DNA of 64,000 nt, taken from IMG/VR virus record IMGVR_UViG_3300017917_003822, positions 186,001 to 250,000 of that record; one strand, written 5' to 3'. Shown here one piece after another: positions 1,091 through 63,945 of the stretch; positions within the stretch are counted from its first letter, which is position 1; the number at the start of each line of letters is the position of its first letter. The position numbers and the translations under genes were made by a program. The notes beneath the pieces are model-generated. The model worked only from the letters and a program-made list of their open reading frames with translations. It searched no databases and was not told the origin of the DNA.

Positions 1091-1596
1091 TGAAGAATCA
1101 ATTTGATGATGCATTCTACCCTCTAATATGGGCACACGTACAACAATATCAAAGGTGCGTCAGTGAATACGGGGGGAAGGAAAGAATAACAAAAAAGGTC
1201 AAGGAGTCATTAAACTCGTGTGTTCAGAAATGGTCAGATTTACCAGCAACAATGGCTTCCTCCAGCGTTATTGAATTCTTTAATTCAAAATTTCCTCATC
1301 TCGATCCTGCCAAGATAACGTGGCACCAGAAATACCTTGTTGGCAGAGATGATAAAAAGAGAGGGATGATAGTGTGGGAACACACAACCCCATTAAATAT
1401 ACTTCTCAAGGAACTGATAACAAAGAAAAATCAGAGGGAGATAAATGAATGTATGAATTCATATTCGGGGGTTTGTTTAATTACCAGGGAGGAGGATGAT
1501 AGGTTAAATGCTAGTGGATTTAGATGTGTAAGGCCTGGAGGCTGGGAAAAATGCTACAGTGATTGTGGGATTGAAGTCATCAAGTTGGATATATAA
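1090..1596 (+). CDS. hypothetical protein (EHxxP...ITxEED motif)
   Basis: 168 aa ORF, TAATG overlap. Confidence 0.75.
   Translation: MKNQFDDAFYPLIWAHVQQYQRCVSEYGGKERITKKVKESLNSCVQKWSDLPATMASSSVIEFFNSKFPHLDPAKITWHQKYLVGRDDKKRGMIVWEHTTPLNILLKELITKKNQREINECMNSYSGVCLITREEDDRLNASGFRCVRPGGWEKCYSDCGIEVIKLDI
1588..1595 (+). promoter_or_regulatory. putative late promoter RATATATA
   Basis: GATATATA, 21 nt before ATG 1617. Confidence 0.55.
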
Positions 1597-1616
1597 TGTA
1601 AATAAAAGATCATAAG

Positions 1617-1988
1617 ATGGAACACATTTTACCATACGAAGCAATCAACGAAGGTGCAGCAGCACTCCCAGCGATGCCTTCTTTTCTCAAATCAGCTGGA
1701 GCTAAACCTACATATGTTCAATACGGAGGTCCGAGAAAAACAAATCAACCACCAAATGCCTGGGAACTAAGGGTACCAGCACCATCCGGGGTTAGCAAGG
1801 AAGAATGGGTAATTACTTTCTTTCCGGACGGATCTTTTAACACAGGGGCAGGATCACAAAAGAATTTTTTAAGAAGTAGCGGTGAATGGAAAGCTGATGC
1901 ATCATCGGATTTTATTTTCGGAACTAAAGCTATCAAGGGGGTTTCTATGAAATTCAACTCGTATATGAGATTGACTCCACTAAATTAA
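1617..1988 (+). CDS. hypothetical, putative virion protein with CTS-like N-terminus
   Basis: MEHILPYEAINE; preceded by late motif. Confidence 0.7.
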   Translation: MEHILPYEAINEGAAALPAMPSFLKSAGAKPTYVQYGGPRKTNQPPNAWELRVPAPSGVSKEEWVITFFPDGSFNTGAGSQKNFLRSSGEWKADASSDFIFGTKAIKGVSMKFNSYMRLTPLN

Positions 1989-2007
1989 GAGGCTAATCAT
2001 AAGATCT

Positions 2008-2043
2008 AAAAGGCAGAGTAATAAATTACCCTGCCTTTTTTTA
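2008..2043 (+). terminator. intrinsic terminator
   Basis: AAAAGGCAG...CTGCCTTTTTTT hairpin plus T-tract. Confidence 0.7.
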
Positions 2044-2045
2044 TT

Positions 2046-2053
2046 GATATATA
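2046..2053 (+). promoter_or_regulatory. putative late promoter RATATATA
   Basis: GATATATA, 22 nt before GTG 2076. Confidence 0.55.
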
Positions 2054-2075
2054 CTAAGACAAAAAGATAAATTTA

Positions 2076-3212
2076 GTGAGCACATCTAGACCATTTGCAT
2101 ACAATCCAGGAACAGGGATAACAGGAACCATTCAGGTAGGGAACTTGGCAGTTGGGTATCCGACGGCTGGATTTGCTGCAACTGGATTGGAGTGGTGGAA
2201 TGGTCCGGATGAGGATCTTGGATACGTGATTGCACAGTCAGTTCCCGATGATAGCCAACCAACTCCTCTACCGGAGACAGCTTCAGTTGGATTCTTTAGG
2301 TCCGACGATCTATCGGACCCTTCATTCATTAGTCTATCTAACGTTATAGCTGGGCTTTCTGGTGCTGGTCCATTTCTCTCAGCATCAAGCGCAAAATCTT
2401 GGTTGAATTCAAATGGATACTGGACATCATATCCGGAGATAACGACAACTACAACAACCACTTTGCCGCCAACGACAACCACGAGCACCACAACGACAAC
2501 AAGTACAACCAGTACCACTACAATAGCTCCTGGTATAGTTACTGATAATTTATTCATGAAGCTTGATGCTAGCAATTACACATCAGGAACTTGGAACGAT
2601 GAGACAGGAAATGGTAATAATGCAACCATAAATGGGGCAACTTGGCAATCAACGGATGGCGGTATCTTTGATTTTGATGGATCCAATGACACCATAAGTA
2701 TACCGGACAACTCAAGTTTAAGATTAAGCACGACGACACAAAAAACGATCCAAGTGTGGGTTAAATTTGATGCTTTAGGTGGATTAAATCAACAAATCCC
2801 AGTATTCGGTAAATTATCATCCTCCTTTAATTTTGATGGTTATTGGGGAGGTCTTTTTTCAAATGCGGGTGCTATTAGATGTGTTACGAACGGAGCAGCA
2901 GTTCAGAAAATCAGCAACTCCATATTAACGGTTAACATAAACACCTGGTATCTCTTTACGTTTATATCTCAAATAACATTCGTCTCAAATACGACCAAGG
3001 TCTATATCAACGAAACTGAGTACATAACAGCTTCTCATGGAAATGACACTTATAACGAGTCTAATCCGCTCTATCTAGGTTGGATAGGATCCGGAGTAGG
3101 TTCACTATATCTAAATGGTAAAATTGGTGCATGTTATTTCTATACTAAGGGTCTTTCAACAGCGGAGATAAGCACTAACTTTAATGCAACAAAATCTAAA
3201 TACGGATTATAA
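2076..3212 (+). CDS. fibre/decoration-like protein: conserved N-domain, Thr-rich linker, LamG (ConA-like) domain
   Basis: LDASNY..W.D.TGNGN.AT...FDFDGSND LamG signature; poly-Thr linker; N-domain paralogous to 7262..8197. Confidence 0.75.
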   Translation: MSTSRPFAYNPGTGITGTIQVGNLAVGYPTAGFAATGLEWWNGPDEDLGYVIAQSVPDDSQPTPLPETASVGFFRSDDLSDPSFISLSNVIAGLSGAGPFLSASSAKSWLNSNGYWTSYPEITTTTTTTLPPTTTTSTTTTTSTTSTTTIAPGIVTDNLFMKLDASNYTSGTWNDETGNGNNATINGATWQSTDGGIFDFDGSNDTISIPDNSSLRLSTTTQKTIQVWVKFDALGGLNQQIPVFGKLSSSFNFDGYWGGLFSNAGAIRCVTNGAAVQKISNSILTVNINTWYLFTFISQITFVSNTTKVYINETEYITASHGNDTYNESNPLYLGWIGSGVGSLYLNGKIGACYFYTKGLSTAEISTNFNATKSKYGL

Positions 3213-3215
3213 GAA

Positions 3216-4889
3216 ATGAGTAACACTATAAAATATGATGCATCATCGGTAATCGGAAATTCCATAAAATCTGGGAATTTTAATATCGGTGTAAATAATA
3301 CACCAGTTGATCTGTCTGGATTTTATAATGGCATTTCACCAATTATTGGAGGTTATACGATTTATATCAATAAAGCTGAAAATGGACCATCAATCTACGC
3401 TCCCAAGAACGATACCGAATTGATTGACATCGCTAATAAATTGGGTGCAGGGGTATCTACCACAGCAGATGCCCTCAATTGGATAAGATCACAATCAAAT
3501 ATGACGGTCCTGAATTCTAATTACCCCCAGATTGTAACGAATGGTCTAGCTTTAAACTTGGATGCCGGATTTGTATCTTCCTATCCAAAAACAGGAACTA
3601 CGTGGACCGATCTGAGCGGGAATGGAATTAATGGAACTTTAGTTAATGGGCCAACTTTTGATTCGTCAAATTATGGAAGTATTGTATTTGACGGTGTTAA
3701 TGATGTTAGTACATTACCAATAAATACTTTTACTAGCGGGTCACCACAAAACGGTACATTTATACTCAAACTTAAAACTCCTCCATTTGATACCACAGCT
3801 CAAGTTATTTTTTTTAGAGACGGTGGTTCAACCGGAAATCTTATTTATTTTTATAGGAATGCTGGTTGGGCAACCAACACTTATGCTTGGTTAATTTATT
3901 CTAATGCCGGTGCGAATATTTTATATGATGTTTATCTTCCCGATCAATGGTATGAAACCGCGTTAACTTTTGATAGCCAGGGAAATGTGAAAACTTATAT
4001 TGATGGAGTATTAAGAGATTCGGAAGTTTGGGATGCTGGTGCAACGTCTTGGAATAGAAGTGGTAGTATTTTACCAAATTTAAGATGTTCGTCCCCAGGT
4101 GGTCCGGGAAATATCCAACGATTTATGTATTATACTAGGGCTTTAAGTGCTAGTGAAATTTTACAAAACTATAACGCAGGCCTCCAAAGATTTATACCAA
4201 CAGATGGATTAGTTCTTTCATTAGATGCTCAAAACACCAATCTTTATGCTACCTCACCAACAACCGCGTATGATGTTAGTGGGAATGATAATAATGGGAC
4301 TTTAATAAATGGGACTCAATATGTTGCTGATGGAGATGGTAGTTGGAGATTTGATGGTGTTGACGATCAAATTACAAATATCGGCACCCTCCCGACATTT
4401 TCATTCATTCAAAACACTGGTATATTTACAATTTGTGCTTGGGTTAGGTTAACTGATTTATCGGCTCCAAGCTATTTTTTGGGTAATAACGACGGAACCG
4501 CATCCAGTAAAGGTTTTTATTTGGGATATCAGGGGTCCAGTGGTAGACTTTGGTTATCAATAACATATGGAGTTGGTGGTCAGGCTACGCTAAATTTACA
4601 AAGAACCAATTTCTTTTTGGATGATAATTGGGTGTTTGTTACTGCGGTTGGAAATGGAACAACCTGTCAATTTTACAGAAACGGACAGACATTTTCGACT
4701 TCCGGAACATTTGGGACTTTCTCAACGGGAGATAGCACAAGAACTCTAGGTCTTGGAAGAATAAACAATTTCAATGGTAGTTATTGGGAAGGTAATGTTT
4801 CACAAACTCAAATTTACAATCGAGCTCTCACTCAAAATGAAATAACAACAATATACAACGCAACAAAATCAAGATATGGAATACAGTAA
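3216..4889 (+). CDS. virion protein with two tandem LamG domains
   Basis: Two LDA...D.SGN..NGTL.NG...FDGV.D...Y.RAL repeats. Confidence 0.75.
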   Translation: MSNTIKYDASSVIGNSIKSGNFNIGVNNTPVDLSGFYNGISPIIGGYTIYINKAENGPSIYAPKNDTELIDIANKLGAGVSTTADALNWIRSQSNMTVLNSNYPQIVTNGLALNLDAGFVSSYPKTGTTWTDLSGNGINGTLVNGPTFDSSNYGSIVFDGVNDVSTLPINTFTSGSPQNGTFILKLKTPPFDTTAQVIFFRDGGSTGNLIYFYRNAGWATNTYAWLIYSNAGANILYDVYLPDQWYETALTFDSQGNVKTYIDGVLRDSEVWDAGATSWNRSGSILPNLRCSSPGGPGNIQRFMYYTRALSASEILQNYNAGLQRFIPTDGLVLSLDAQNTNLYATSPTTAYDVSGNDNNGTLINGTQYVADGDGSWRFDGVDDQITNIGTLPTFSFIQNTGIFTICAWVRLTDLSAPSYFLGNNDGTASSKGFYLGYQGSSGRLWLSITYGVGGQATLNLQRTNFFLDDNWVFVTAVGNGTTCQFYRNGQTFSTSGTFGTFSTGDSTRTLGLGRINNFNGSYWEGNVSQTQIYNRALTQNEITTIYNATKSRYGIQ

Positions 4890-5147: not shown

Positions 5148-5155
5148 GATATATA
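5148..5155 (+). promoter_or_regulatory. putative late promoter RATATATA
   Basis: GATATATA, 4 nt before ATG. Confidence 0.6.
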
Positions 5156-7261: not shown

Positions 7262-8197
7262 TTAGTAGAATGATACTGTTATTGTTTGAGTTGATGAATT
7301 ACACGAAGGACCGTTTAATCCTCCCCAGTTAGAATTTTTAATCATAGGTCTGACTGTATATCTACCAGCTCCTCCACAAGCACAGATGCTGTCGTTTGTT
7401 AAGTAAATGGAATTTGCATCGGCGGTACCAGCAACACATCCCTGAACTACTCTCCAAGTATTACTACCTATCACGGTAGAAAAACTTGTTCCGATTGTTG
7501 CTGTTCTTAAAGCATTTGCTATGTCCTGTACTTTGGTTGGATCAGTAACCGTAATTGAAGCTCCTAAATTATTGGATATAGCCATCGTGGTATAAGTGCC
7601 AGTTAGTGATGCTCTAAAAGAGGTCCATGCATTCTCTATGGCTGTTCCCGGAGATTGACCTCCGATGAAAGTTTGAGAAAAGGATCCCGGAGGTACAGGC
7701 ATAGCTGTTGTAGTGGTGCTTGTGCTCGTGGTTGTCGTAGTGGTTGGAGCTATTGTTGTTGTACTAGTTGTTGTACTAGTTGTGGTGGTTGGCGGTAATG
7801 TTGTCGTTGTGGTTGTACTAGTTGTCGTGGTGGTTGTTGTCGTTTCTGGATATGATGTCCAATACCCATTGGTGTTTAGCCAATCTTTAGCATCGCTTGC
7901 ACTAGAAAACGTCTGATTAAAAAGACCGTTACAAAGATCTATAAAACTCTGATCAGACTTAACATCGGATCTCCAGAATCCTATTGTTGGTCCAGGTACT
8001 ATCACAGTTCCCTTACCTGCCGTTCTATCTCCAGATACATGACATATAATATAACCAGGATCCTCATCCGGTCCATTCCACCATTTAACTCCCCCACCAT
8101 AATCTGCAGGTTCACTTCCAACTGCTATGTAACCAATCTGGGAGGTTCCAGTGATTCCAGTCCCGTCATTATAAGCAAAAGATCTAGTTGTTGCCAA
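7262..8197 (-). CDS. fibre/decoration-like protein: conserved N-domain, Thr-rich linker, Cys-containing C-domain
   Basis: Paralogue of 2076 N-domain (FAYN.GTGITGT, WWNGPDED.GY, WLN.NGYWTSYPE); TTG start at 8197 aligns with the paralogue start. Confidence 0.7.
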   Translation of the reverse strand: MATTRSFAYNDGTGITGTSQIGYIAVGSEPADYGGGVKWWNGPDEDPGYIICHVSGDRTAGKGTVIVPGPTIGFWRSDVKSDQSFIDLCNGLFNQTFSSASDAKDWLNTNGYWTSYPETTTTTTTTSTTTTTTLPPTTTTSTTTSTTTIAPTTTTTTSTSTTTTAMPVPPGSFSQTFIGGQSPGTAIENAWTSFRASLTGTYTTMAISNNLGASITVTDPTKVQDIANALRTATIGTSFSTVIGSNTWRVVQGCVAGTADANSIYLTNDSICACGGAGRYTVRPMIKNSNWGGLNGPSCNSSTQTITVSFY

Positions 8198-8223
8198 TTT
8201 TTTTAAACCACTTAGTTTGATTT

Positions 8224-8231
8224 TATATATC
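8224..8231 (-). promoter_or_regulatory. putative late promoter RATATATA
   Basis: GATATATA on minus strand upstream of 8197. Confidence 0.5.
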
Positions 8232-8247
8232 ACATTGGGGCCAAAAT

Positions 8248-8925: not shown

Positions 8926-9750
8926 TTATTTTAATAAAGAGTAGTACTCCTTAAAGTGTTTGATTCTATCAGCTAAACCAATGGTACCACCATTCACTCT
9001 CCTAGTTACCGAAGTAACAACAGCATCGGTTGCTCCCTGATCGCAGATAGACCAAAGTTTATTAGTATTAAAAAACCAAGCTGCTGAAGCTAGAGGGTAT
9101 TTAGTAGCAACTAAATCTGGATTTGCAAGAATGTCATCGTCAACAAATTTATCAAAAGCAGCGTAGTTTGATTTACCTGTTAGTTGGATATAACCTCTAC
9201 CTCTAAATTTGAAACCGTCTCTAGATGCTTCGTCACCATTACCCATTCTTCCACCATATACTCTGGCAGCGATTTTTTCTGGCTGTCTTGCATATGATTC
9301 ATTCAAATTTCCTGGGAAATATTTAGGGAAGATCTTTTTAAGACCGTCAGCTGAATAGTTCAAATTCTCCTGAACAGCTTTAAATCCACCCGATTCGTGA
9401 CCACATTGAGCTAAAAAGTGAGCTAATCTTAATGTGTTAGTGATGCCAAATTTAGCCGCGGTATCTGGAATTTGTGCGATAACAGAATCGGGAATGTGTC
9501 CCTTTAGTGCGCTCAATTTGAAAGCGGATGGTGGAACTGTAGCTGCCGGAGCTGCTGCAACAGGAGCTGTTCCGAATAATTTAGTCCAAGTTCCAGGTCC
9601 AACAATACCATCAGCAGTAAGACCGTTGGCTGCTTGCCACTCTTTCACTTTAGCCTCAGTACCTGGTCCGAAAGAACCATCTGCGACTAATCCTAATTTC
9701 TCCTGGAGTTTTTTAACGTCATCTCCCTTAGACCCATTTTTTAGTAACAT
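8926..9750 (-). CDS. endolysin: peptidoglycan-binding domain plus GH19 lysozyme/chitinase-like domain
   Basis: DG.FGPGT/DGIVGPGT PG-binding repeats; AHFLAQCGHES, ENLNYS, RGRGYIQLTG, VNGG..GL.DR. Confidence 0.9.
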   Translation of the reverse strand: MLLKNGSKGDDVKKLQEKLGLVADGSFGPGTEAKVKEWQAANGLTADGIVGPGTWTKLFGTAPVAAAPAATVPPSAFKLSALKGHIPDSVIAQIPDTAAKFGITNTLRLAHFLAQCGHESGGFKAVQENLNYSADGLKKIFPKYFPGNLNESYARQPEKIAARVYGGRMGNGDEASRDGFKFRGRGYIQLTGKSNYAAFDKFVDDDILANPDLVATKYPLASAAWFFNTNKLWSICDQGATDAVVTSVTRRVNGGTIGLADRIKHFKEYYSLLK

Positions 9751-9772
9751 AGTTGTTTTGGTTTTTTATTTT

Positions 9773-9780
9773 TATATATT
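9773..9780 (-). promoter_or_regulatory. putative late promoter RATATATA
   Basis: AATATATA on minus strand, 22 nt before endolysin ATG. Confidence 0.55.
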
Positions 9781-9808
9781 CCGATATGGCCAAAAAACTG
9801 GGTGATTA

Positions 9809-9840
9809 TTTTTTTATCCCGACTTTTTTTTGTACATTTG
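9809..9840 (+). promoter_or_regulatory. T-tract/CG-N11/TAnnTTTG promoter
   Basis: CG 9820-21, TACATTTG 9833-40. Confidence 0.7.
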
Positions 9841-9867
9841 CAATGCAATAGGAAATATATAAAGCCA

Positions 9868-10419
9868 ATGAAAATCACACTAACCCTACTTATCATCTTA
9901 TTGACATCTAAGAACCCGGAGCAGATTAATTTTACACCAAAAGAAACACCGGAAAAGATCAGTCATCTAGAAAAAAAATCAGAAAAAGAAGAGGAAATCG
10001 GACGTCTTAATTTACAGAATCTGTATAAAAAAATCGTAAAATCTGGAATAGAATTTCCTGATGTTGCTTTTGCACAAGCAGTTTTGGAATCAGGTTATTT
10101 TAAAAGTAAGATTTCACTTCATAATTCTAATCTTTTTGGAATGAGATTACCAAAAAGCAGACCAACAACAGCTAAAGGAGAAAAAAGAGGCTACTCAGTT
10201 TATGATTCATGGCACGGGAGTGTTGATGACTATAAACTATACCAGGAGAAGATTCTCAGAAAAAAAGAAATAACTAGGGATGAATATTTACAAAAGCTGA
10301 ACCGAAACTATGCATTTAGTCCACTCTATAGTAAAAAGATCTCATCCATTATCAAGAAACATCGAGACATCATAGGTGAGGTACCTGAGCATATGAAAGA
10401 CGGCAAGATAGAAAAATAA
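9868..10419 (+). CDS. GH73 glucosaminidase-like protein with N-terminal hydrophobic segment
   Basis: [23 protein letters not shown]...Y; likely start [10 protein letters not shown] downstream of the promoter. Confidence 0.75.
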
Positions 10420-11396
10420 TGAAAAAAGAAAGAGTTTTAATAACCGGAGCTGCTGGATTCCTTGGCAGTCATTTATGCGATAGGTTTATCAAGGAGGGAT
10501 ATCACGTAATTGGGATGGATAATCTAATTACTGGAGATCTAAGAAACATAGAGCATCTGTTTCATCTTGAACAATTTGAGTTTTACAATCACGACGTAAG
10601 TAAATTCGTTCATGTTCCAGGTGAATTAAAATACATCTTACATTTTGCGTCACCAGCATCTCCGATAGACTACCTTAAAATTCCAATTCAGACTCTAAAG
10701 GTTGGTTCACTAGGTACTCACAATCTTCTAGGTCTAGCAATGGAGAAGAAAGCTAGAATTTTGGTTGCTAGTACATCAGAGGTTTACGGTGATCCTACCA
10801 TCCATCCACAGAACGAGGATTATTGGGGAAATGTTAACCCGGTGGGACCAAGAGGAGTTTATGATGAAGCAAAAAGATTTCAGGAAGCCATCACCATGGC
10901 ATATCACACCTTCCATGGTTTAGAAACAAGAATAGTCAGAATATTCAATACATACGGACCAAGAATGAGGTTAAATGACGGTAGAGTTTTACCGGCTTTT
11001 ATGGGTCAAGCATTAAGAGGAGAGGATTTAACCATCTTTGGTGACGGCAGTCAGACGAGAAGTTTTTGTTACGTTGATGATCTGGTTGAGGGAATCTATA
11101 GGCTTCTTTTAAGTGACTGTCCAGATCCGGTTAATATAGGAAACCCCTCGGAAATTACCATCGGGCAGTTTGCGGAGGAGATTATTAAGCTAACCGGAAC
11201 CGATCAAAAAACTGTTTATAAATCTCTTCCTGTTGATGATCCCAAGCAAAGAAAACCAGATATCACGAAAGCTAAGACAGTACTTAATTGGGAACCCGTC
11301 ATTAGCAGGGAGGAAGGATTGAGGTTGACCTGGGAATATTTCAAATCTCTCCCATCGGAGAGACTTTACGAAGAAGCACATCATAGAAAATTTTAA
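10419..11396 (+). CDS. UDP-glucuronate decarboxylase (UDP-xylose synthase) family SDR
   Basis: [49 protein letters not shown]. Confidence 0.9.
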
Positions 11397-11397
11397 T

Positions 11398-11607
11398 ATG
11401 AAAAAACACGACTGCTATAAATGTAAACACAGGGAAAGAATACCCGGAGATGCACACTCAAAATGTAATGCTGATGTAAAGAAGGGGGATGTTAAAATTA
11501 TTTACTTGAATCAGTGGTCGATCTTTTTTCCAATTAACTACGATCCTGTTTGGATCAAATCATGTAAAAACTACGAATCTAAAATAGAAGAAAATGAAAT
11601 ATGTTAG
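11398..11607 (+). CDS. small Cys-rich hypothetical protein
   Basis: CYKCKHR..PGDAH.C...FPINYDP.W. Confidence 0.7.
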   Translation: MKKHDCYKCKHRERIPGDAHSKCNADVKKGDVKIIYLNQWSIFFPINYDPVWIKSCKNYESKIEENEIC

Positions 11608-12262
11608 CATTGATATCGAGACAAGTGGTCTCGATCCAGAAAGAAATCAGATACTCTCCATTGGTGCAATAATCGAGGACACTGAGAAAAAATTACCTTT
11701 TGATGAATTACCTAAATTTCACGTGGGTATACTAAGACAGGAGATAACGGGATCGTTATTTGCTATTAATTTAAACCGAGATCTTATCGAGACTTTGGTT
11801 CAATATCAAACTGCAGAATCACAGGATGAGAAGAATGATCTTGTGCATATGACAGGTATGCAATTTTTAAAAGAAGAAGATGTCGTGGAAGCATTCCATG
11901 ATTTTCTATATGAGAATGGATTATCCTCTGTTAATTCATTGGAGCATCATATGAAAGTGGTGAATGGAAAATCATATCCAGCATTAACATCAAGAATGAC
12001 TCCCGCGCAAATTAATGTAGCTGGGAAAAATTTTGGAACTTTTGATAAGCTTTTCCTTGAGAGATTGCCTAGATGGAAACAAGCAATCAGGATCAGACAA
12101 AGAATTATAGATCCGTCGGTTATTTTTACTGACTGGAAAGAGGATTCTTCCTTACCTTCTTTAAATCAATGCAAGCAGAGAGCCAAAATTGATGGTGAGG
12201 TTACACATAATGCATTGGAAGATGCATGGGACGTGATAGCATTACTCAGAACACAATACTAA
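11594..12262 (+). CDS. DEDDh 3'-5' exonuclease (DnaQ-like)
   Basis: SIDIETSG, GKNFGTFD, HNALEDA. Confidence 0.85.
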   Translation: MKYVSIDIETSGLDPERNQILSIGAIIEDTEKKLPFDELPKFHVGILRQEITGSLFAINLNRDLIETLVQYQTAESQDEKNDLVHMTGMQFLKEEDVVEAFHDFLYENGLSSVNSLEHHMKVVNGKSYPALTSRMTPAQINVAGKNFGTFDKLFLERLPRWKQAIRIRQRIIDPSVIFTDWKEDSSLPSLNQCKQRAKIDGEVTHNALEDAWDVIALLRTQY

Positions 12263-12265
12263 TTA

Positions 12266-12300
12266 GCAAAAAAAAGCCTAGAAATTTCTAGGCTTTTTTG
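12266..12300. terminator. bidirectional terminator
   Basis: AAAAAAGCCTAGA/TCTAGGCTTTTTT between convergent genes. Confidence 0.8.
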
Positions 12301-12314
12301 TGAATTTATTTATC

Positions 12315-13709: not shown

Positions 13710-13980
13710 CGTATCTTTCTTTTAATTTTCCAAGATTGAACTCCATTGGAGTTTTATTTTTTCTAAGCTCTTCCATGAATCTCTTCATAACATCCGCAAC
13801 TTTAGCTTTAGGAGCTGGTTCAACAGATGGTTTATCTCTCCTAATCGGACTAGGTCTGGAAGGAGTTTTTGATGGAGAAGTTCCGGGTTTTATTGTTGGA
13901 GCCGGTTGACCAGGCTTAGTAGCTGGTTGATTAGCCGTTTTTGTTGCTAAAAACTCATCAATTTTAGTAATAATCTTCAT
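13702..13980 (-). CDS. Pro-rich hypothetical protein
   Basis: 92 aa; PATKPG/PTIKPG repeats. Confidence 0.7.
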   Translation of the reverse strand: MKIITKIDEFLATKTANQPATKPGQPAPTIKPGTSPSKTPSRPSPIRRDKPSVEPAPKAKVADVMKRFMEELRKNKTPMEFNLGKLKERYDD

Positions 13981-14000
13981 TAGTATTGATTTTTATTTTG

Positions 14001-14010
14001 AATATATATC
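14001..14010. promoter_or_regulatory. bidirectional putative late promoter
   Basis: AATATATATC reads RATATATA on both strands, 21-22 nt before two divergent ATGs. Confidence 0.6.
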
Positions 14011-14029
14011 GAAAGATAATATTATAGAT

Positions 14030-15607
14030 ATGATGACCAATCAAAGTTTCCGTAGTTTTTTTGAAGCTGCACCGTTAATGGAAAATGTTCAGGCGGCAAA
14101 AGACTATTTATTAAAGCAATATGCAGAAAAAAAGAAGATAAAACCTTCTGAGTTAAGCGATGAGGAAAAGAAGGATATTCTTCTTAATCCAAAATTTATT
14201 GAGATCAGAGATCTAGTTGCTAAACAACCAGGATACACTTTACCCTTCCTGATATTCTACATTGAGCAAAAAGCCCATATGGAAGAGCTTGAAGAAATTC
14301 TGGATTACTTAAATAAATTTAAAACTCAGCTTTCCGAACTTAGCATGCCAGTTGCGGATTTTGCTAAGATCCAACCAACTAAGGATGATCCTAGACCTGG
14401 TTACGAACACCTTGGAGATGAGCTTAGAAATATCGAGAGAAGAAGAAAGCTTAAGGAGCTTTATAATGAGCTAACCCCAAGAATGAAAAAACAGTTCAAT
14501 AAAGCATCTAATGAACAAATAGAGGATTTAACAGCTATTTCGAACCAACTTAAATCACTTCCAGATATCGTTAGTAAGGATGATCTTGATGCGGAGGGTA
14601 AACCTAAGGTTCTTAACGCTTGGAAATCTTTTTCCAGAAATATGAAAAAGTACGACGACACAAGAACTTATCCTGAATATGCGGATGAAAAGGTTGCTTT
14701 TGGTGACATAGCAAAGGATGCCCTAGATTTCATAGAGGGTTGGGGACAAGATGAGGACGCACTTCTTAAAAAACTTAAAGAACTAGGACCTCAAGTTGGG
14801 ATCCTGTACGCTAAAAAAGGTTATATTGCGATGTCTGCAAGAACACCGGAGGCCCAAAGGGCAGTGTGTGCGGATACTAACTGGTGTATTAGAACAGATT
14901 CTACCTTCTGGAGCTATGGAGGCGGAAGAATCCAAATAAACATCATCAACAAAAATCTTCCGGTTACAGATAATCTAAGTCTTATTGGTATCACAATCAA
15001 TCCGAATGGAACTATTCACACAGATGCAACCAGACCAAACAACAGGCTTAGAGATCAGAATGGGAGCACATTCAAAACATACATCGATGCACTTCGTGGG
15101 CTTGGTTATCCAGCAGATCTAATTAAGGATGTTGAAGATAAATTCCAAAGAGAAGTAGATATTAAGTTAGCTCTGGAACATTACTATAAAGATGGATCCA
15201 ATCTATCACCAAGAAAAGTCGTAGAATCTCTAATTACGATGAGCAAGGGATTCCTATCAGGGGTAATGCCTCAGGAAGACTGGGAAAGAATATCCGGTAT
15301 CGTATCTCAAATTATCTTTGAAGATAAGGGTCTTACTAAAGGGGCGTTTATGAAGATATTTAAAGAAAATGGTATTTACGTTGAAGCAACATGGAACGTA
15401 TTCGACTCGTTAATCGGTAAGGATTACACAAAAGAGGAGATGAAGGAGATTGGAGACTCAACTAAATCTGGATTGGAAGCAATGGCAGAATTACTTGAGA
15501 TTGAGGACAGCGGGGCATTAGGGATGAGAAAATCTGATGTCGATGCAATGAAGGAGGTAGTTTCTAATAAGAAATGGGTTCTTGAGCAGATCTCAAAAAG
15601 AATGTAA
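14030..15607 (+). CDS. hypothetical protein with TxWC motif
   Basis: 525 aa; DTNWCI. Confidence 0.75.
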   Translation: MMTNQSFRSFFEAAPLMENVQAAKDYLLKQYAEKKKIKPSELSDEEKKDILLNPKFIEIRDLVAKQPGYTLPFLIFYIEQKAHMEELEEILDYLNKFKTQLSELSMPVADFAKIQPTKDDPRPGYEHLGDELRNIERRRKLKELYNELTPRMKKQFNKASNEQIEDLTAISNQLKSLPDIVSKDDLDAEGKPKVLNAWKSFSRNMKKYDDTRTYPEYADEKVAFGDIAKDALDFIEGWGQDEDALLKKLKELGPQVGILYAKKGYIAMSARTPEAQRAVCADTNWCIRTDSTFWSYGGGRIQINIINKNLPVTDNLSLIGITINPNGTIHTDATRPNNRLRDQNGSTFKTYIDALRGLGYPADLIKDVEDKFQREVDIKLALEHYYKDGSNLSPRKVVESLITMSKGFLSGVMPQEDWERISGIVSQIIFEDKGLTKGAFMKIFKENGIYVEATWNVFDSLIGKDYTKEEMKEIGDSTKSGLEAMAELLEIEDSGALGMRKSDVDAMKEVVSNKKWVLEQISKRM

Positions 15608-15614
15608 ATATATA
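15607..15614 (+). promoter_or_regulatory. putative late promoter RATATATA
   Basis: AATATATA, 4 nt before ATG. Confidence 0.55.
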
Positions 15615-15618
15615 CAAT

Positions 15619-16899: not shown

Positions 16900-16904
16900 T
16901 AAAT

Positions 16905-33443: not shown

Positions 33444-33451
33444 GATATATA
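33444..33451 (+). promoter_or_regulatory. putative late promoter RATATATA
   Basis: GATATATA, 4 nt before ATG. Confidence 0.6.
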
Positions 33452-34776: not shown

Positions 34777-34784
34777 TATATATC
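34777..34784 (-). promoter_or_regulatory. putative late promoter RATATATA
   Basis: GATATATA on minus strand, 4 nt before ATG. Confidence 0.6.
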
Positions 34785-38530: not shown

Positions 38531-39565
38531 ATGAAAATAATTATCACAGGAGGTGCGGGTTATATTGGATCCCACACTGCAGTAGAAGCACTAAGAGCAG
38601 GTCATGAAGTTATCATTATAGATTCCTTCATCAATTCATCGAGAGATGTACTTAAAAACATAGAAAAAGCATCAGGCAAGCCTTTTGTAGCTATCGATGT
38701 ATGTATGACTCAGAATACGCTAGATATTGCGGAGAAGCTTTTTGGTTTTGCACATAACACCGATGCAATTATTCACTTTGCTGCATTAAAGGATTCCCCA
38801 GGATCAACAGAAAACCCGCTGGGATATTATAGAAACAATATAGACTCATTGCTTAGTGCGCTGGGGGTTTCTAAATTACTTAAAATCAAGAACTTCATAT
38901 TCTCCAGTTCTGCGACGGTTTATGGTTATCCCGAGTATCTACCGATCAAAGAAACACACCCAATTCTAAGAGGAACTACACCATACGGGACTTCAAAAAT
39001 AATGGGAGAATGGATTCTAGAGGATGTAACCAGAGGTAACGATATGAGGTCCGTTGCACTGAGGTATTTTAATCCGGCTGGTGCAGATCACACTGGACTT
39101 ATTGGGGAAATGCCAATAGGTAGAGCAACAAACCTTGTACCTATTATAACACAATCAGCCGCTGGAATATATGGTCCGTTAAAAATAACTGGTACTGATT
39201 ATTCAACTCCAGATGGCTCTGCGATTAGAGACTACATCCACGTGACGGACTTAGCAAAGGCGCACTTAGCGGCTCTAGATTGGATGGTTGACCACGAAAT
39301 GAAGTTCTTTGAGACTTTTAATCTGGGTACGGGTAGAGGAACATCGGTAATTGAAATGGCTGAATTGTTCGACAAGGAGATTGCCCCGGGCTTATTAAAA
39401 ACAGAGTTTGCTGATAGAAGACCAGGAGATCCGGCCGAAGTTTGGTGTGATTCATCAAAGGCACAAAGAATTCTTGGATGGAGATCTGAATTAGACAACT
39501 TGGATATTTTGAGAAGTGCCTGGGAGTGGCAGAAGAACATTGCAACTGAGAATTCGGATATATAA
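38531..39565 (+). CDS. galE: UDP-glucose 4-epimerase
   Basis: TGGAGYIGSH, HFAALK, SSSATVYG, YGTSK, LRYFNP, RDYIHV.DLA. Confidence 0.9.
   Translation: MKIIITGGAGYIGSHTAVEALRAGHEVIIIDSFINSSRDVLKNIEKASGKPFVAIDVCMTQNTLDIAEKLFGFAHNTDAIIHFAALKDSPGSTENPLGYYRNNIDSLLSALGVSKLLKIKNFIFSSSATVYGYPEYLPIKETHPILRGTTPYGTSKIMGEWILEDVTRGNDMRSVALRYFNPAGADHTGLIGEMPIGRATNLVPIITQSAAGIYGPLKITGTDYSTPDGSAIRDYIHVTDLAKAHLAALDWMVDHEMKFFETFNLGTGRGTSVIEMAELFDKEIAPGLLKTEFADRRPGDPAEVWCDSSKAQRILGWRSELDNLDILRSAWEWQKNIATENSDI
39557..39564 (+). promoter_or_regulatory. putative late promoter RATATATA
   Basis: GATATATA, 4 nt before ATG. Confidence 0.6.
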
Positions 39566-39568: not shown

Positions 39569-40213
39569 ATGAAAAACATTAAACTATTCGAAGATTTTAG
39601 TAACATACCGGATTTCAATGATATTATTGATCAGGTCGTAAAATTCCTTGAGAAGGATAAGAAGGACCTGATTTCAGTTAACAAGATGCATATAATCATA
39701 AAAAAAGCTTTTGATTCGGTCACGTTGGCCGAATTATTTAGCTTTCTGAATAATCTGGGATATAAAATGACAATATATCCCGACATTTCACCCTCCTCAA
39801 TGAATTCGAGATTTACTGTAAGTAAAATAAACTACAAGGATCCCATAGGTGATCTAAAATACGGTCTTAGTTTATTAATAGATTCAAAGTTAGGAGAAAA
39901 GCAGACTAAAACCTGCATTAACATATTGGGAAACAACATTGGAATAACCAGTCTGGGTAATTTCATGCAGGATATTTTAATCAAAAAAATCAACGACAAT
40001 GAAATTGATTTGCTTTTCTGGAACGGGAAATATTTAGTTACAGGCGAATTTGAACAGACGTCCATCCACCGGGAGGATGATATGGTTGCATTAGACTTTG
40101 AAAGCTACGAGACTTCAGATAAAAGAGACTATATTCTTTCCGCTACTGCATCAGGATCTTGGGCGGCAGGATATGATATTGAACAAATCGAATATATAGA
40201 TTTTTTAAATTAA
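39569..40213 (+). CDS. hypothetical protein, CTS-like N-terminus
   Basis: MKNIKLFEDF. Confidence 0.7.
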   Translation: MKNIKLFEDFSNIPDFNDIIDQVVKFLEKDKKDLISVNKMHIIIKKAFDSVTLAELFSFLNNLGYKMTIYPDISPSSMNSRFTVSKINYKDPIGDLKYGLSLLIDSKLGEKQTKTCINILGNNIGITSLGNFMQDILIKKINDNEIDLLFWNGKYLVTGEFEQTSIHREDDMVALDFESYETSDKRDYILSATASGSWAAGYDIEQIEYIDFLN

Positions 40214-40684: not shown

Positions 40685-40692
40685 TATATATT
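40685..40692 (-). promoter_or_regulatory. putative late promoter RATATATA
   Basis: AATATATA on minus strand, 4 nt before ATG. Confidence 0.55.
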
Positions 40693-40707: not shown

Positions 40708-41151
40708 ATGATGACTAGATCAAAAACAAAAAAGCAACCGGAAAAAAGAAGTGACGAGATTACCGATCTGGAGGTTGCTAGAAAAATGTTAAAAATATAC
40801 CAGAGCGCACAGGACAGAAAGCTTGACTTTGATCTTGGCTTTGAGTCGGTTAAAAAATTATTGTCATACCCAACTTGTTACTATACTGGAAGAAGATTTG
40901 AAGAGGAAGGTTCGTTTTCCAGAAGTTTCGATAGAGTTGATTCATCCAAGGGATACGTCGAGGGAAATGTTGTTGCATGCACTGTTGACATTAACGGGAA
41001 AAAGAGCAATTTATCGGTGGAGGAAATAGAATGTCTGTACATTAAATTGGTTAAGCCTCAATCGTTTAAAATGGAGGAGTCCAAAAAAATAGAAATGGAG
41101 GTAAATTTCCAGGAAATAAATAATCTGGAGGGGAACCAGGAGGATATATAA
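40708..41151 (+). CDS. T4 Srd-like / degenerate HNH-fold protein
   Basis: SAQDR..DFDL....K.LL....CYYTG..F......SFDRVD...GYVEGNVV. Confidence 0.55.
   Translation: MMTRSKTKKQPEKRSDEITDLEVARKMLKIYQSAQDRKLDFDLGFESVKKLLSYPTCYYTGRRFEEEGSFSRSFDRVDSSKGYVEGNVVACTVDINGKKSNLSVEEIECLYIKLVKPQSFKMEESKKIEMEVNFQEINNLEGNQEDI
41143..41150 (+). promoter_or_regulatory. putative late promoter RATATATA
   Basis: GATATATA, 4 nt before ATG. Confidence 0.6.
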
Positions 41152-58842: not shown

Positions 58843-58871
58843 TATATATCTGAAAATGACTTAAATATATA
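58843..58871. promoter_or_regulatory. divergent pair of putative late promoters
   Basis: GATATATA minus (58843-50, 22 nt to ATG) and AATATATA plus (58864-71, 4 nt to ATG). Confidence 0.6.
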
Positions 58872-60005: not shown

Positions 60006-60040
60006 TCATCTATAAAAACAAAAAACAAAATTATTAAAAA

Positions 60041-62193: not shown

Positions 62194-62770
62194 AAGCTCT
62201 CTTCTTAATCTCCAGATACTTATTTATATTCTTTTCGAACTCTTCCTTGGTCTGGTTTATTTTTCCGAGGAAGATTTCTCTTTCCCTTTCTGTTAATCTA
62301 TTGTAAACCTTGATAAAGGAACCCGGATCTGATTTATAGACGTCAACAATCACATTTCCAAAGTTGGCATCTTGTCCCGTTGTTGCGTAGTCTATCGCTC
62401 TGCCCTTTCTGCTTTTATATCTCTTTCTTGCCCATTCCAGAACGTAGAAAAATCTAAGATTCCAATCATCAAGAGTTCTTATCTCGGTAAATCTCTTAAG
62501 AATATGAACATGGAATGAATTTTGATATCCCGGGGTCGATTTTCTTATCGGCCCATTTCCATAAATTGTGATGCAATTACCGGGCCTATCCATATCAAGT
62601 TCATCATTATAAAGTCTCATATTTCCATTATCCCAGATCCTGTCGGTTGTGGAATCATAAAACCCAACAGATTCTAAAACTGAAAAAATAGGCAGGGCCT
62701 TTACCTCATCCAGGGTATAGTTATAACCATTAGATTCGAAAAGAGCAAAGGACTTTAAATTGATCATCAT
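62186..62770 (-). CDS. hypothetical protein, CTS-like N-terminus
   Basis: MINLKSFALFES; AATATATA at 62794-62801 minus. Confidence 0.7.
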   Translation of the reverse strand: MMINLKSFALFESNGYNYTLDEVKALPIFSVLESVGFYDSTTDRIWDNGNMRLYNDELDMDRPGNCITIYGNGPIRKSTPGYQNSFHVHILKRFTEIRTLDDWNLRFFYVLEWARKRYKSRKGRAIDYATTGQDANFGNVIVDVYKSDPGSFIKVYNRLTEREREIFLGKINQTKEEFEKNINKYLEIKKRAFI

Positions 62771-62800
62771 ACGTGTGGTTTAAATTTATCCCATATATAT

Positions 62801-62832
62801 TTTTTTTATTCCGATGCTTTTTTATACATTTG
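62801..62832 (+). promoter_or_regulatory. T-tract/CG-N11/TAnnTTTG promoter
   Basis: CG 62812-13, TACATTTG 62825-32. Confidence 0.7.
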
Positions 62833-62843
62833 TAAAAAAAATA

Positions 62844-63602
62844 ATGGATATGAACCCTATATTGGAATCAGTAAAAGATTTTTGTCAGGTTAGAAACACC
62901 GGAAGAGCGTATGAGAATGGACCAGAACCAACTCCAAGGGTTAATTTCATAATCAGCCTATTAGAAAAGTTTGAGATACCGTACGAGATCGATGTGTTCG
63001 ATGATTTTGATACGAATCTATATAATATCGTCATGAGAGGAACGAGTAAAAGAATGGTGATAGCACATCATGATATAGTCAATCCCAACTCAGAAAATGC
63101 CAATGATAACTCAGCATCAGTTATTAATGCGATCTATTTAAAGTCGCTGGTACCTGAACTTAACGTGGTTATTACCGACGGTGAGGAAGTTGGTTTCCGC
63201 GGTGCTAGAAGATTGGCCAAGAGAATAGTTAGCGGCGATTTTGGTGAGATTGAGTGGGTTCTCAATATAGAACTATCGGGAAGAGGGGGTAAACATTTCA
63301 TGATAGGTAAACATGACGGCAAACTAACCGAACATATCGTGGACATGTTCGATCCACCGATTGTGCAGACCCCAGGAAGCGATTGTTATGCGCTTGCTTC
63401 ATATGGGATAGATACTAATGTAATCAATCCACTTCCACTTCTGAGCGAAGGTCAGATTTCAGAAATAGCTAGCAACAATGGGTATTTGGATAATTCGTCA
63501 TGGTGGTTATGTCACAGCGACGAGGACACTCTAGACAAGATATCAACGAAAGACATGGAAGAGTTCGTAACTGAGGTTCTTGTTCCGATTGTAACAAAAT
63601 AA
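62844..63602 (+). CDS. M28-family zinc peptidase
   Basis: AHHD, ANDNSAS, DGEEVG..G, LNIE, SD, HS.ED. Confidence 0.82.
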   Translation: MDMNPILESVKDFCQVRNTGRAYENGPEPTPRVNFIISLLEKFEIPYEIDVFDDFDTNLYNIVMRGTSKRMVIAHHDIVNPNSENANDNSASVINAIYLKSLVPELNVVITDGEEVGFRGARRLAKRIVSGDFGEIEWVLNIELSGRGGKHFMIGKHDGKLTEHIVDMFDPPIVQTPGSDCYALASYGIDTNVINPLPLLSEGQISEIASNNGYLDNSSWWLCHSDEDTLDKISTKDMEEFVTEVLVPIVTK

Positions 63603-63610
63603 AAATATAA

Positions 63611-63811
63611 ATGATAGGAGCAGTTGTAATTAAAGCGGAGTACATCTCGGAGGCCAAAGAGAAATACGGTAATGAAATGGTGGATAAGATCTTCACTCTA
63701 ATGAAAGGACAACATCCGGATACCATTTTATGGGAACTAGAAAATGAGGAAAAAGAATGTTTTTTGTTACTGATGAAAAATAGATATCAAAAAGATGAAA
63801 CAAAAAACTAA
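63611..63811 (+). CDS. hypothetical protein
   Basis: 66 aa ORF. Confidence 0.6.
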   Translation: MIGAVVIKAEYISEAKEKYGNEMVDKIFTLMKGQHPDTILWELENEEKECFLLLMKNRYQKDETKN

Positions 63812-63881
63812 ATGGCGGATATAGTAAAAGACAACTCTAGAAGGCTTGGTTTAAACCACTCATAGATGTTTGTTTTGGTTC

Positions 63882-63910
63882 ACCAGGGTCCAATTGGACT
63901 CTGGTTTTTT
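63882..63910 (+). terminator. intrinsic terminator
   Basis: CCAGGGTCC/GGACTCTGG plus T-tract. Confidence 0.65.
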
Positions 63911-63945
63911 GTTTCCCGTGAATATATAAAAAAAATCTTGTTGTT

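What the first reader, a model, noticed from the sequence alone, without database searches (positions are those of the whole stretch)
1588..63928. Second motif RATATATA with bimodal spacing to the start codon (4 nt or 21-23 nt)
Seen: about 18 copies on both strands before virion-like and lysis genes. Eight are exactly 4 nt from ATG (5160, 15619, 33456, 34772, 39569, 40680, 41155, 58876) and seven are 21-23 nt away (1617, 2076, 9750, 13980, 14030, 58820, 62770). One 10-mer at 14001-14010 serves two divergent genes. Established: T4 late promoters are a lone TATAAATA box read by the phage sigma gp55. Inference: this is the late promoter of this phage; the 4-nt class yields leaderless mRNAs and the other a fixed leader of about 18 nt, giving two translation modes.
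Basis: partly seen in the sequence, partly recalled or inferred. Interest (0 to 1): 0.6.

Follow-up and report, generated by a model that had tools for sequence, protein, structure and literature searches.

The report
Late promoter box giving leaderless mRNAs
RATATATA is very probably the T4-style late promoter of a 271-kb jumbo phage of Bacteroidota. About a quarter of its copies sit so close to the start codon that the mRNA should begin at the AUG, an arrangement not seen in T4 or one cyanophage.

Summary
The window holds 19 RATATATA copies. All 8 listed 4-nt cases and all 7 listed 21-23-nt cases check out. RATATATA-N4-ATG occurs 8 times against 0.19 expected.

The window is bases 186001-250000 of a 270,629-bp phage, which has 84 copies. 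ATATATA is the most enriched 7-mer upstream of genes in this phage and in four relatives.

Pooled spacing is sharply bimodal: a peak at 4 nt (39), a near-empty zone at 8-14 nt, and a broad mode at 15-31 nt. The 5th base after the box is a purine in 94% of long-spacing sites, which marks the likely start of transcription. In the 4-nt class that base is the A of ATG.

The phage encodes a gp55-family sigma with region 2 only. Its only solved-structure match is T4 gp55. Boxes precede sheath, prohead protease, endolysin and virion genes. Replication genes instead use a separate Bacteroidota-type TAnnTTTG promoter.

Box presence and spacing class are kept in orthologues while flanks diverge to random. 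The box is also depleted inside genes.

So this is a T4-type late promoter variant with a systematic leaderless class. No transcript data could be obtained, so start sites, timing and the sigma assignment are inferred.

The parts
1588..1595 (+). Late box GATATATA, long class. It lies 21 nt before ATG 1617 (123 aa). Predicted start A1600, leader 17 nt.
   Evidence: 5th-base purine rule
2046..2053 (+). Late box, long class. It lies 22 nt before GTG 2076, a 378-aa virion structural protein followed by a paralogue at 3216-4889. Predicted start G2058.
   Evidence: phrog_8510 E=9e-18 and 2e-32
5148..5155 (+). Late box, short class. It lies 4 nt before ATG 5160 (469 aa, function unknown). The predicted start is the A of ATG, so the mRNA is leaderless. 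Orthologues keep the box at 4-5 nt.
8224..8231 (-). Box GATATATA at the 5' edge of ORF 7262-8233(-). The start codon is uncertain; a TTG lies 26 nt downstream.
   Evidence: no family hit
9773..9780 (-). Late box, long class. It lies 22 nt before ATG 9750, the endolysin gene 8926-9750(-). It is kept in G002-G004 at 18-21 nt.
   Evidence: (phrog_181 E=4.5e-71)
9854..9861 (+). Box 6 nt before ATG 9868 (183 aa, endolysin-like). The same gene also has an early-type promoter starting at 9819.
   Evidence: phrog_21890 E=7e-10
14001..14010 (.). Bidirectional pair sharing one TATATA core. AATATATA on + (14001-14008) lies 21 nt before ATG 14030. GATATATA on - (14010-14003) lies 22 nt before ATG 13980. 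Predicted starts are A14013 (+) and A13998 (-).
   Evidence: both arms kept in G001-G003
15607..15614 (+). Late box, short class. It overlaps the TAA stop of the upstream gene and lies 4 nt before ATG 15619 (426 aa). The box is kept at 5 nt in L025/G001 and 4 nt in L026, and the protein aligns from residue 1 in G001.
33444..33451 (+). Late box, short class, 4 nt before ATG 33456 (245 aa, SLT lytic transglycosylase domain).
   Evidence: (PF01464 E=3.7e-10)
34777..34784 (-). Late box, short class, 4 nt before ATG 34772 (192 aa).
39557..39564 (+). Late box, short class, 4 nt before ATG 39569 (214 aa; N-terminus MKNIKLFEDF).
40191..40198 (+). Orphan AATATATA at the 3' end of gene 39569-40213, with no downstream same-strand start within 500 nt. 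Probably non-functional.
40685..40692 (-). Late box, short class, 4 nt before ATG 40680 (156 aa). Kept at 4 nt in G002.
41143..41150 (+). Late box, short class, 4 nt before ATG 41155 (267 aa). The box is kept at 4-5 nt in all four relatives, although the proteins are only 25-49% identical.
58843..58850 (-). Late box, long class, 22 nt before ATG 58820 (82 aa). It stands back-to-back with the next box, 13 bp apart.
58864..58871 (+). Late box, short class, 4 nt before ATG 58876 (145 aa).
62794..62801 (-). Late box, long class, 23 nt before ATG 62770 (194 aa). It overlaps the T-run of a divergent early-type promoter at 62811(+).
63921..63928 (+). Box 17 nt before ATG 63946 (61-aa ORF that runs past the window end).

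Best explanation
RATATATA is the -10-type box of the late promoters of a T4-related jumbo phage that most likely infects a member of the Bacteroidota. The host RNA polymerase core carries the phage's 119-aa gp55-family sigma, which has region 2 only. It recognises the lone box without any -35 element and starts at the first purine 5 nt (sometimes 6 nt) downstream, so the box occupies about -12 to -5.

Where the box lies 4 nt before ATG, or 5 nt with a pyrimidine at the 5th base, the transcript begins at the A of AUG. Such an mRNA has no leader and must be translated by the leaderless route. This applies to about 28% of gene-proximal boxes.

Where the box lies 15-31 nt upstream, the transcript has an A-rich leader of about 11-27 nt with no Shine-Dalgarno sequence, as is usual for Bacteroidota messages. 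Leaders of about 4-10 nt would serve neither route and are almost absent.

Shown here: the motif, its position, its conservation, its avoidance inside genes, the gp55 homologue, and the gene classes it precedes. Inferred: the start sites, late timing, which sigma reads the box, and the mode of translation.
For: 1. Position. ATATATA is the top enriched 7-mer in the 60 nt upstream of genes (56 observed, 2.1 expected) in this phage and in all four whole relatives fetched. 52 of 84 boxes lie within 35 nt upstream of a gene start, against about 2 expected.

2. Fixed start signal. In 188 long-class sites from five genomes, the 5th base after the box is A in 144 and G in 32. No -35-like column exceeds 0.4 bit.

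3. Spacing. There is a peak at d=4 (39 sites; p=3e-16 within d=0-7). d=8-14 holds 11 sites against 59 expected (p=1e-16). In the d=5 class the 5th base is a pyrimidine in 12 of 16 sites, against 12 of 188 in the long class (p=5e-10). The first purine is then again the A of ATG.

4. Sigma. The gp55-like gene matches PHROG 234 at E=1.5e-15, cyanophage gp55 at 3.7e-11 and T4 gp55 at 1.3e-6. Its only PDB hit is 7d7c_F, T4 gp55. The counterparts of T4 Y97 and T99 are kept in the alignment. In T4 these residues hold A-12 and A-8 (PMC7892883). The phage has no Rpb2-type polymerase of its own.

5. Gene classes. Boxes precede the tail sheath, the prohead protease with the major head protein gene directly downstream, a tail-fibre-like protein, endolysin, an SLT protein and virion proteins. 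Ligase, exonucleases, ribonucleotide reductase, topoisomerase II and thymidylate synthase lack a box. Several of them carry a different promoter ending in TAnnTTTG.

6. Conservation. Between G000 and its orthologues, box status is box/box 107, box/none 46, none/box 29 and none/none 649 (odds ratio 52). Spacing class is kept: long-long 77, short-short 23, crossed 4. Flanks of short-class pairs are 34% identical, against 30% expected by composition.

7. Avoidance. Inside genes the box is depleted on the sense strand (113 observed, 199-268 expected) and more so on the antisense strand (32 observed, 120-184 expected).

8. One RNA gene fits. The predicted mature 5' G of the phage tmRNA is the 6th base after a box whose 5th base is T.

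9. Translation context. Shine-Dalgarno-like words occur before only 4-6% of genes. Leaders peak in A at -11 to -14 and at -3, as in Flavobacterium (PMC6847099).
Against: - There is no transcript evidence. The one possible RNA run holds only short, low-depth contigs that cannot show 5' ends.
- No gp33 or gp45 homologue was found, so a T4-like clamp-activated mechanism is unproven.
- The gp55-like protein is shorter than T4 gp55 (119 against 185 aa).
- Gene starts come from a longest-ORF heuristic.
- Exact-box retention in the short class is only about half: 24 of 49 orthologues keep a box, 23 of them in the short class.
- Host transcripts in a model Bacteroidota species are mostly leadered (PMC6847099), so efficient leaderless translation in this host is assumed, not known.
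Confidence: 0.78

Rival explanations
1. The box is a promoter, but it is read by a different sigma: the phage's 202-aa ECF-like sigma or a host alternative sigma. In that case the gp55-like protein serves other sites.
For: An ECF-like sigma with regions 2 and 4 is encoded at genome 22041-22649, in an operon with an early-type promoter. No experiment links either sigma to the box.
Against: ECF and other sigmas that have region 4 use a -35 element, and none is seen upstream of the box. A sigma with region 2 only fits a lone -10 box, as in T4 (PMC2988020). The box matches TATAAATA at 6 of 8 positions. The gp55 residues that hold A-12 and A-8 in T4 are conserved (PMC7892883).
Confidence: 0.12
2. 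The box acts at the RNA level rather than as a promoter. It would be an A/U-rich translation enhancer or ribosome-binding patch on polycistronic mRNA, or a processing site.
For: Bacteroidota lack Shine-Dalgarno sequences and rely on A-rich upstream bases (PMC6847099). Many short-class boxes lie directly after the stop codon of an upstream gene in the same orientation.
Against: A translation signal should sit at one distance from the start codon, not at 4 nt and again at 15-31 nt with a gap between. The conserved purine sits at a fixed distance from the box, not from the ATG. Boxes work in divergent pairs between genes and before a tmRNA gene. The strong antisense avoidance inside genes fits a DNA-level signal.
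Confidence: 0.06
3. The pattern is an artefact of AT-rich intergenic DNA combined with mis-called start codons.
For: The raw count in the window is only about 2.5 sd above dinucleotide shuffles. Starts were called by a longest-ORF rule.
Against: RATATATA-N4-ATG occurs 8 times against 0.19 expected. There is a strong R preference before ATATATA (84 R against 9 Y). The pattern replicates in five genomes. Orthologue alignments start at residue 1. The box is retained while flanks are randomised.
Confidence: 0.02

Closest known systems
T4 late promoter TATAAATA read by gp55 (with gp33 and the gp45 clamp)
   Same: Both are a lone 8-bp A/T box at the -10 position with no -35 element. Both occur on either strand before virion and lysis genes. 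Both phages encode a sigma of the gp55 family. The box is identical at 6 of 8 positions, and T4 also accepts A at the first position (PMC2988020).
   Different: The fifth box position is T instead of A. The conserved start purine is the 5th base after the box; in T4 the box is placed at -13 to -6, which puts the start at the 6th base. The sigma is 119 aa rather than 185 aa. No gp33 or gp45 homologue was detected. T4 late boxes are followed by Shine-Dalgarno leaders and show no pile-up at 4 nt.
Late-promoter variants of other T4-related phages (KVP40, 44RR, S-PM2, Aeh1; cyanophage ACG-2014i checked here)
   Same: These are in-silico consensus boxes close to TATAAATA, paired with a conserved gp55 (PMC2988020).
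   Different: In the one cyanophage checked, the three ATAAATA boxes checked that lie 4-5 nt before an ATG are not at annotated starts. The annotated starts lie 22-77 nt downstream. A leaderless class is therefore not evident there.
TA-led (leaderless) genes of Actinobacteria and Deinococcus-Thermus
   Same: A -10-like box about 10-12 nt upstream of the start codon is taken as the signature of leaderless mRNA (PMC3160421).
   Different: There the box is the host housekeeping TAnnnT. Here it is a phage-specific late box in a host phylum whose own transcripts are mostly leadered (PMC6847099).
Bacteroidota primary-sigma promoter (-33 TTTG, -7 TAnnTTTG)
   Same: The same phage uses such a -7 box for a second promoter class before replication-type and small genes.
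   Different: RATATATA lacks the TTTG core and any upstream partner. The two classes mark different gene sets.

Membership tests
T4-type (gp55-dependent) late promoter system | The phage encodes a gp55-family sigma with region 2 only | tested here: met
   L010:9487-9846 (119 aa) matches PF04542 region 2 only, and phrog_234 'late sigma transcription factor' at E=1.5e-15. It also matches cyanophage gp55 at 3.7e-11 and T4 gp55 at 1.3e-6. Its sole PDB hit is 7d7c_F. It is conserved in all five genomes.
T4-type (gp55-dependent) late promoter system | A lone 8-bp A/T box at about -10 with no -35 element | tested here: met
   Logos of 66 and 188 sites show no upstream column above 0.4 bit and a purine at a fixed 5th base downstream.
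T4-type (gp55-dependent) late promoter system | The box sequence is TATAAATA | tested here: not met
   The consensus is RATATATA, identical at 6 of 8 positions. TATAAATA itself is not enriched (20 and 17 copies on the two strands).
T4-type (gp55-dependent) late promoter system | The box precedes late (virion, lysis) genes on either strand and not replication genes | tested here: met
   Sheath, prohead protease, endolysin, SLT and virion proteins have a box. Ligase, ribonucleotide reductase, topoisomerase II, thymidylate synthase and exonucleases do not.
T4-type (gp55-dependent) late promoter system | gp33 co-activator and gp45 sliding-clamp activator | tested here: inconclusive
   There was no hit with PF09116 or PF02916, nor by phmmer with T4 gp33 or gp45 or cyanophage gp45. 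A gp44-like clamp loader is present at E=1e-38, so a diverged clamp is likely.
T4-type (gp55-dependent) late promoter system | A C-terminal clamp-binding epitope on gp55 that is shared with other clamp partners | tested here: inconclusive
   The C-terminal tail TIPFSYITGEDNSYNV is conserved in the clade, but no other protein ends in a similar motif.
T4-type (gp55-dependent) late promoter system | Transcripts start a few bases downstream of the box, late in infection | not testable with these tools
   The only candidate RNA run gave short contigs without usable ends.
Leaderless mRNA genes | A -10-type box about 10-12 nt upstream of the start codon | tested here: met
   The box ends 4 nt before the start codon in 39 genes of five genomes, and 5-7 nt before it in 31 more.
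Leaderless mRNA genes | The mRNA 5' end lies at the start codon and translation is leader-independent | not testable with these tools
   This is inferred from the purine rule and from the pyrimidine at the 5th base in the d=5 class.
Bacteroidota primary-sigma promoter | A -7 element TAnnTTTG | tested here: not met
   RATATATA sites lack it. A separate class of 21 plus-strand sites in G000 carries it.

The most novel reading that the evidence does not exclude
A clade of widespread aquatic jumbo phages of Bacteroidota has rebuilt the T4 late programme so that about a quarter of late transcripts are born leaderless, with leader lengths of 4-10 nt excluded by selection. This would give the phage a second, initiation-signal-independent translation channel. 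Many late proteins in both spacing classes share an N-terminal MKNIKxFEDF-type tag and may be packaged into the capsid. The phage also carries its own tmRNA and a RimK-like ribosomal protein S6 modifier, so it may actively reshape host translation late in infection.
Probability: 0.4. Interest if true: 0.7.

Novelty: new variant of a known kind. Interest (0 to 1): 0.55.

Why it matters
T4-type late transcription is a textbook system, but it is known almost only from Proteobacteria and cyanobacteria phages. In this work it was found only as a T4/gp55-type system.

This analysis gives a precise, testable late-promoter consensus and predicted start sites for an uncultured but widespread lineage of jumbo phages of Bacteroidota. 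Near-identical DNA occurs in 17 studies.

It also shows a designed split of late genes into leaderless and leadered messages, with a forbidden zone between the two. That natural experiment defines the minimum leader a ribosome that does not use Shine-Dalgarno pairing needs, which makes an open question about translation initiation in Bacteroidota directly testable.

The box is also a practical annotation aid. It marks late genes and true start codons in genomes where most proteins have no known relatives.

Tried and rejected
- RNA evidence. One run search and one read-laying were allowed. The only possible RNA run (X20) gave 151-319-nt contigs at depth 2-5, so there is no verdict on 5' ends.
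- Megablast of the window against the phage collection found no match.
- A phage multisubunit RNA polymerase (PF00562) was not found, so a phiKZ/AR9-type late system was dropped.
- gp45 and gp33 searches by Pfam and phmmer found nothing.
- A search for a shared C-terminal clamp motif found only the gp55-like protein.
- A third promoter motif was sought, modelled on the conserved region upstream of the gp55 gene. It does not recur above control.
- The strict Bacteroidota two-box pattern TTTG-N17-21-TAnnTTTG is not enriched. The real early class has a T-run plus yCCG in place of TTTG.
- RATATATA-N4-ATG is not enriched in Chryseobacterium phage MA9V-2, Tenacibaculum phage PTm1, LR756500 or Lak-B5. 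The arrangement is therefore specific to this sub-clade. Upstream regions in MA9V-2 show a GTATACTA-like box instead.
- PHROG, Pfam and Atlas searches left most short-class proteins unexplained.
- A first Markov simulation and one phmmer run timed out and were redone.

Full report
**What the window is.** The window is bases 186001-250000 of a 270,629-bp viral record judged 99% complete. It has 36% G+C, and about 90% of genes lie on one strand.

The phage is T4-related:
- It has a T4-type portal (PF07230, E=8e-58).
- It has gp4-like head completion and gp2-like end-protector genes.
- It has a gp44-like clamp loader, tail sheath, tail tube, prohead protease and major head protein.

The nearest portal and gp55 relatives are uncultured huge phages (LR756500-LR756504), the Lak phages of Prevotella, Chryseobacterium phages MA9V-1 and MA9V-2, Tenacibaculum phage PTm1 and Sphingomonas phage PAU.

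Three further observations fit this relative set:
- Shine-Dalgarno-like words occur before only 4-6% of genes.
- Leaders are A-rich at -3 and at -11 to -14. This is the pattern described for Flavobacterium (PMC6847099).
- A second promoter class ends in TAnnTTTG.

The host is therefore most likely a member of the Bacteroidota. This is an inference.

**The observation.**
- The window has 19 RATATATA copies.
- Eight end exactly 4 nt before an ATG that opens a long ORF.
- Seven end 21-23 nt before a start codon.
- One 10-mer at 14001-14010 carries a box on each strand for two divergent genes.

The bare count is only about twice the shuffle expectation (19 against 10.5). The arrangement RATATATA-N4-ATG is 40-fold over expectation, at 8 against 0.19.

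In the whole genome there are 84 copies. ATATATA is preceded by a purine in 84 cases and a pyrimidine in 9. It is the most enriched 7-mer in the 60 nt upstream of genes, with 56 genes against 2.1 expected. 52 boxes lie within 35 nt upstream of a same-strand gene start, where about 2 are expected.

**Replication in relatives.** A protein of the window (15619-16899) found eight related loci in seven jumbo-phage contigs of 218-373 kb and one 41-kb fragment, at 63-77% identity. Four of these genomes were fetched whole.

In each of them ATATATA is again the top upstream 7-mer, and the spacing histogram has the same shape. The pooled counts are:
- d=4: 39 sites.
- d=5: 16 sites.
- d=6: 6 sites.
- d=7: 9 sites.
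- d=8-11: 3 sites.
- d=12-14: 8 sites.
- d=15-31: 184 sites.

The gap holds 11 sites against 59 expected under a flat distribution (p=1e-16). The spike at 4 nt has p=3e-16.

**Where transcription should start.** In the 188 long-class sites, the 5th base after the box is A in 144 and G in 32. It is followed by an A-rich stretch. Upstream there is only mild T-richness, part of it from terminator tails, and nothing like a -35 element. A purine at a fixed distance from a lone A/T box is what a start site looks like.

In the 4-nt class this base is the A of ATG. In the 5-nt class the 5th base is a pyrimidine in 12 of 16 cases, against 6% in the long class (p=5e-10). The first purine is then again the A of ATG.

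One RNA gene gives an independent hint. The ARAGORN-predicted mature 5' G of the phage tmRNA is the 6th base after a box whose 5th base is T. This holds in this genome only.

With the start at the 5th base, the long class has leaders of about 11-27 nt, and leaders of 4-10 nt are nearly absent.

**Are the 4-nt ATGs real starts?** Four observations say yes:
- They are the first start codon of long ORFs.
- They pile up at one offset, while offsets 0-3 hold 6 cases in all.
- Orthologue alignments begin at residue 1 on both sides.
- Upstream flanks of orthologous short-class pairs are 34% identical, against 30% expected by composition. The box and its 4-5-nt spacing are nonetheless kept.

**Which polymerase reads the box?** No phage Rpb2-type polymerase is present. 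Two sigma genes are.

One is a 119-aa protein with region 2 only. Its matches are:
- PHROG 234, 'late sigma transcription factor', at E=1.5e-15.
- Cyanophage gp55 at 3.7e-11.
- T4 gp55 at 1.3e-6.
- In the Protein Data Bank, T4 gp55 alone (7d7c_F).

It is almost invariant across the five phages. In the T4 structure, gp55 holds nontemplate A-12 with Y97 and A-8 with T99 (PMC7892883). The aligned residues are Y and T here, within NPFAYFTQ against NPHAYITQ in T4. The box keeps A at the matching second and sixth positions.

The T4 box is TATAAATA at -13 to -6, with A tolerated at the first position (PMC2988020). RATATATA differs mainly at the fifth position.

The other sigma is ECF-like, with regions 2 and 4. 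It sits in an early-type operon. It would be expected to need a -35 element, which the boxes lack.

gp33 and gp45 homologues were not detected. The clamp-activation part of the T4 mechanism therefore remains open.

**Which genes follow the box?** Boxes stand before:
- the tail sheath (d=29);
- the prohead protease (d=26), with the major head protein gene directly downstream;
- a tail-fibre-like protein;
- a head-closure-like protein;
- the endolysin (window 8926-9750, d=22);
- an SLT transglycosylase protein (window 33456, d=4);
- virion structural proteins (window 2076).

DNA ligase, two exonucleases, dCMP deaminase, ribonucleotide reductase, topoisomerase II, thymidylate synthase and the clamp loader have no box. 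Several of these genes, and many small genes, are instead preceded by a second conserved promoter: a T-run, then yCCG, 15 bases, then TTTG, that is TAnnTTTG. There are 21 plus-strand copies in this genome, and the class is present in all five.

The two classes are largely complementary, which supports an early/late split. Most short-class genes have no recognisable family.

**Selection.** Box presence is strongly shared between orthologues (107/46/29/649, odds ratio 52). Spacing class is kept: long-long 77, short-short 23, crossed 4. These counts are not phylogenetically independent, but the randomised flanks show that the time elapsed was enough to erase unselected sequence.

Inside genes the box is avoided. 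The sense strand has 113 copies against 199-268 expected. The antisense strand has 32 against 120-184 expected. This is expected for a strong promoter element.

**Comparison with known systems.** T4 late boxes are followed by Shine-Dalgarno leaders and show no accumulation at 4 nt. In cyanophage ACG-2014i, the three boxes checked that lie 4-5 nt before an ATG are not at annotated starts.

RATATATA-N4-ATG is not enriched in MA9V-2, PTm1, LR756500 or Lak-B5. MA9V-2 seems to use a GTATACTA-like box. The variant box together with the leaderless class is thus a feature of this sub-clade.

The logic of inferring leaderless genes from a -10 box about 10-12 nt before the start codon is established for bacteria (PMC3160421). 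In Flavobacterium johnsoniae, 87% of host transcripts have leaders over 10 nt (PMC6847099). The phage pattern is therefore not simply inherited from the host.

The literature searches found no description of this box or of leaderless late genes in T4-related phages. The library does not cover all journals.

**Limits.** No transcript 5' ends could be examined, because the single candidate RNA run was uninformative. Late timing, the sigma assignment, the start positions and leaderless translation are all inferences from sequence. Gene calls are heuristic.

**Verdict.** It is a new variant of a known kind of system.

Noticed in passing
window 9819, 19245, 21335, 25547, 27193, 34814, 48173, 55108, 59984, 62811 (+ strand; first base of yCG): A second conserved promoter class: a T-run, then yCCG, 15 bases, then TTTG (TAnnTTTG, the Bacteroidota -7 box). 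It precedes the ligase, exonuclease and dCMP deaminase/ECF-sigma genes and many small genes. G000 has 21 plus-strand copies, and the class is present in all five genomes.
   Followed up: partly
N-termini of box-preceded genes, e.g. window 15619, 39569, 58876; genome 49805, 56767, 265560: Late proteins share an N-terminal pattern M-x-x-[ILVMF]-x-x-[FYW]-x-x-[FYWL] (for example MKNIKLFEDF). The odds ratio against other genes is 7-41 in each of five genomes, with p from 1e-5 to 3e-11. It recalls the conserved capsid targeting sequence of T4 internal proteins (PMC3012670). The sequence resemblance itself is from memory and was not tested.
   Followed up: partly
genome 157052-157523 (L016:17052-17523), outside the window: A phage-encoded tmRNA with tag EVEYAVAA. 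Its 5' end lies 6 nt after a late box. G003 and G004 also carry a tmRNA, but without an exact box.
   Followed up: partly
genome 47404-47411 (L011:7404-7411), inside the prohead protease gene 46011-47960: A box inside the protease gene, followed 24 nt later by an in-frame ATG that would give a 174-aa C-terminal product. This may be a nested scaffold-like gene with its own late promoter.
   Followed up: no
genome 30977-32572 and 32577-34202: Two tandem portal-like genes (PF07230 E=8e-58; phrog_213 E=4e-65).
   Followed up: no
genome 150676-152133: A RimK-like 'ribosomal protein S6 glutaminyl transferase' homologue (phrog_2599, E=2e-20) with a late box 26 nt upstream. Together with the tmRNA it hints at phage action on translation.
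   Followed up: no
genome 29220-29487 and the same place in G001-G004: A conserved terminator hairpin followed by a conserved GAAAT...TA(A/G)AAT stretch lies upstream of the gp55 gene in all five genomes. It matches neither promoter class. It may be a middle promoter, but no recurring copies were found.
   Followed up: partly
window 58843-58871 and 62794-62830: Two promoter pairs. One is a back-to-back late/late pair 13 bp apart. The other is a late box whose A-run is the complement of the T-run of a divergent early-type promoter.
   Followed up: no
window 9000-17000: Near-identical DNA is held by runs from 17 studies of pond, lake, river, salt marsh, wastewater, marine and soil metagenomes. 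One pond run carries the whole stretch without a difference and may be the source.
   Followed up: no
G002 (L033-L051) 37975-69403: The 373-kb relative carries 33 tRNA genes, while this phage has one (tRNA-Tyr, anticodon ATA as called by ARAGORN).
   Followed up: no
G003 118510 and G004 117912 (orthologues of genome 127027): Short-class genes whose start codon is GTG, 4-5 nt after the box. These would be leaderless mRNAs beginning with GUG.
   Followed up: no
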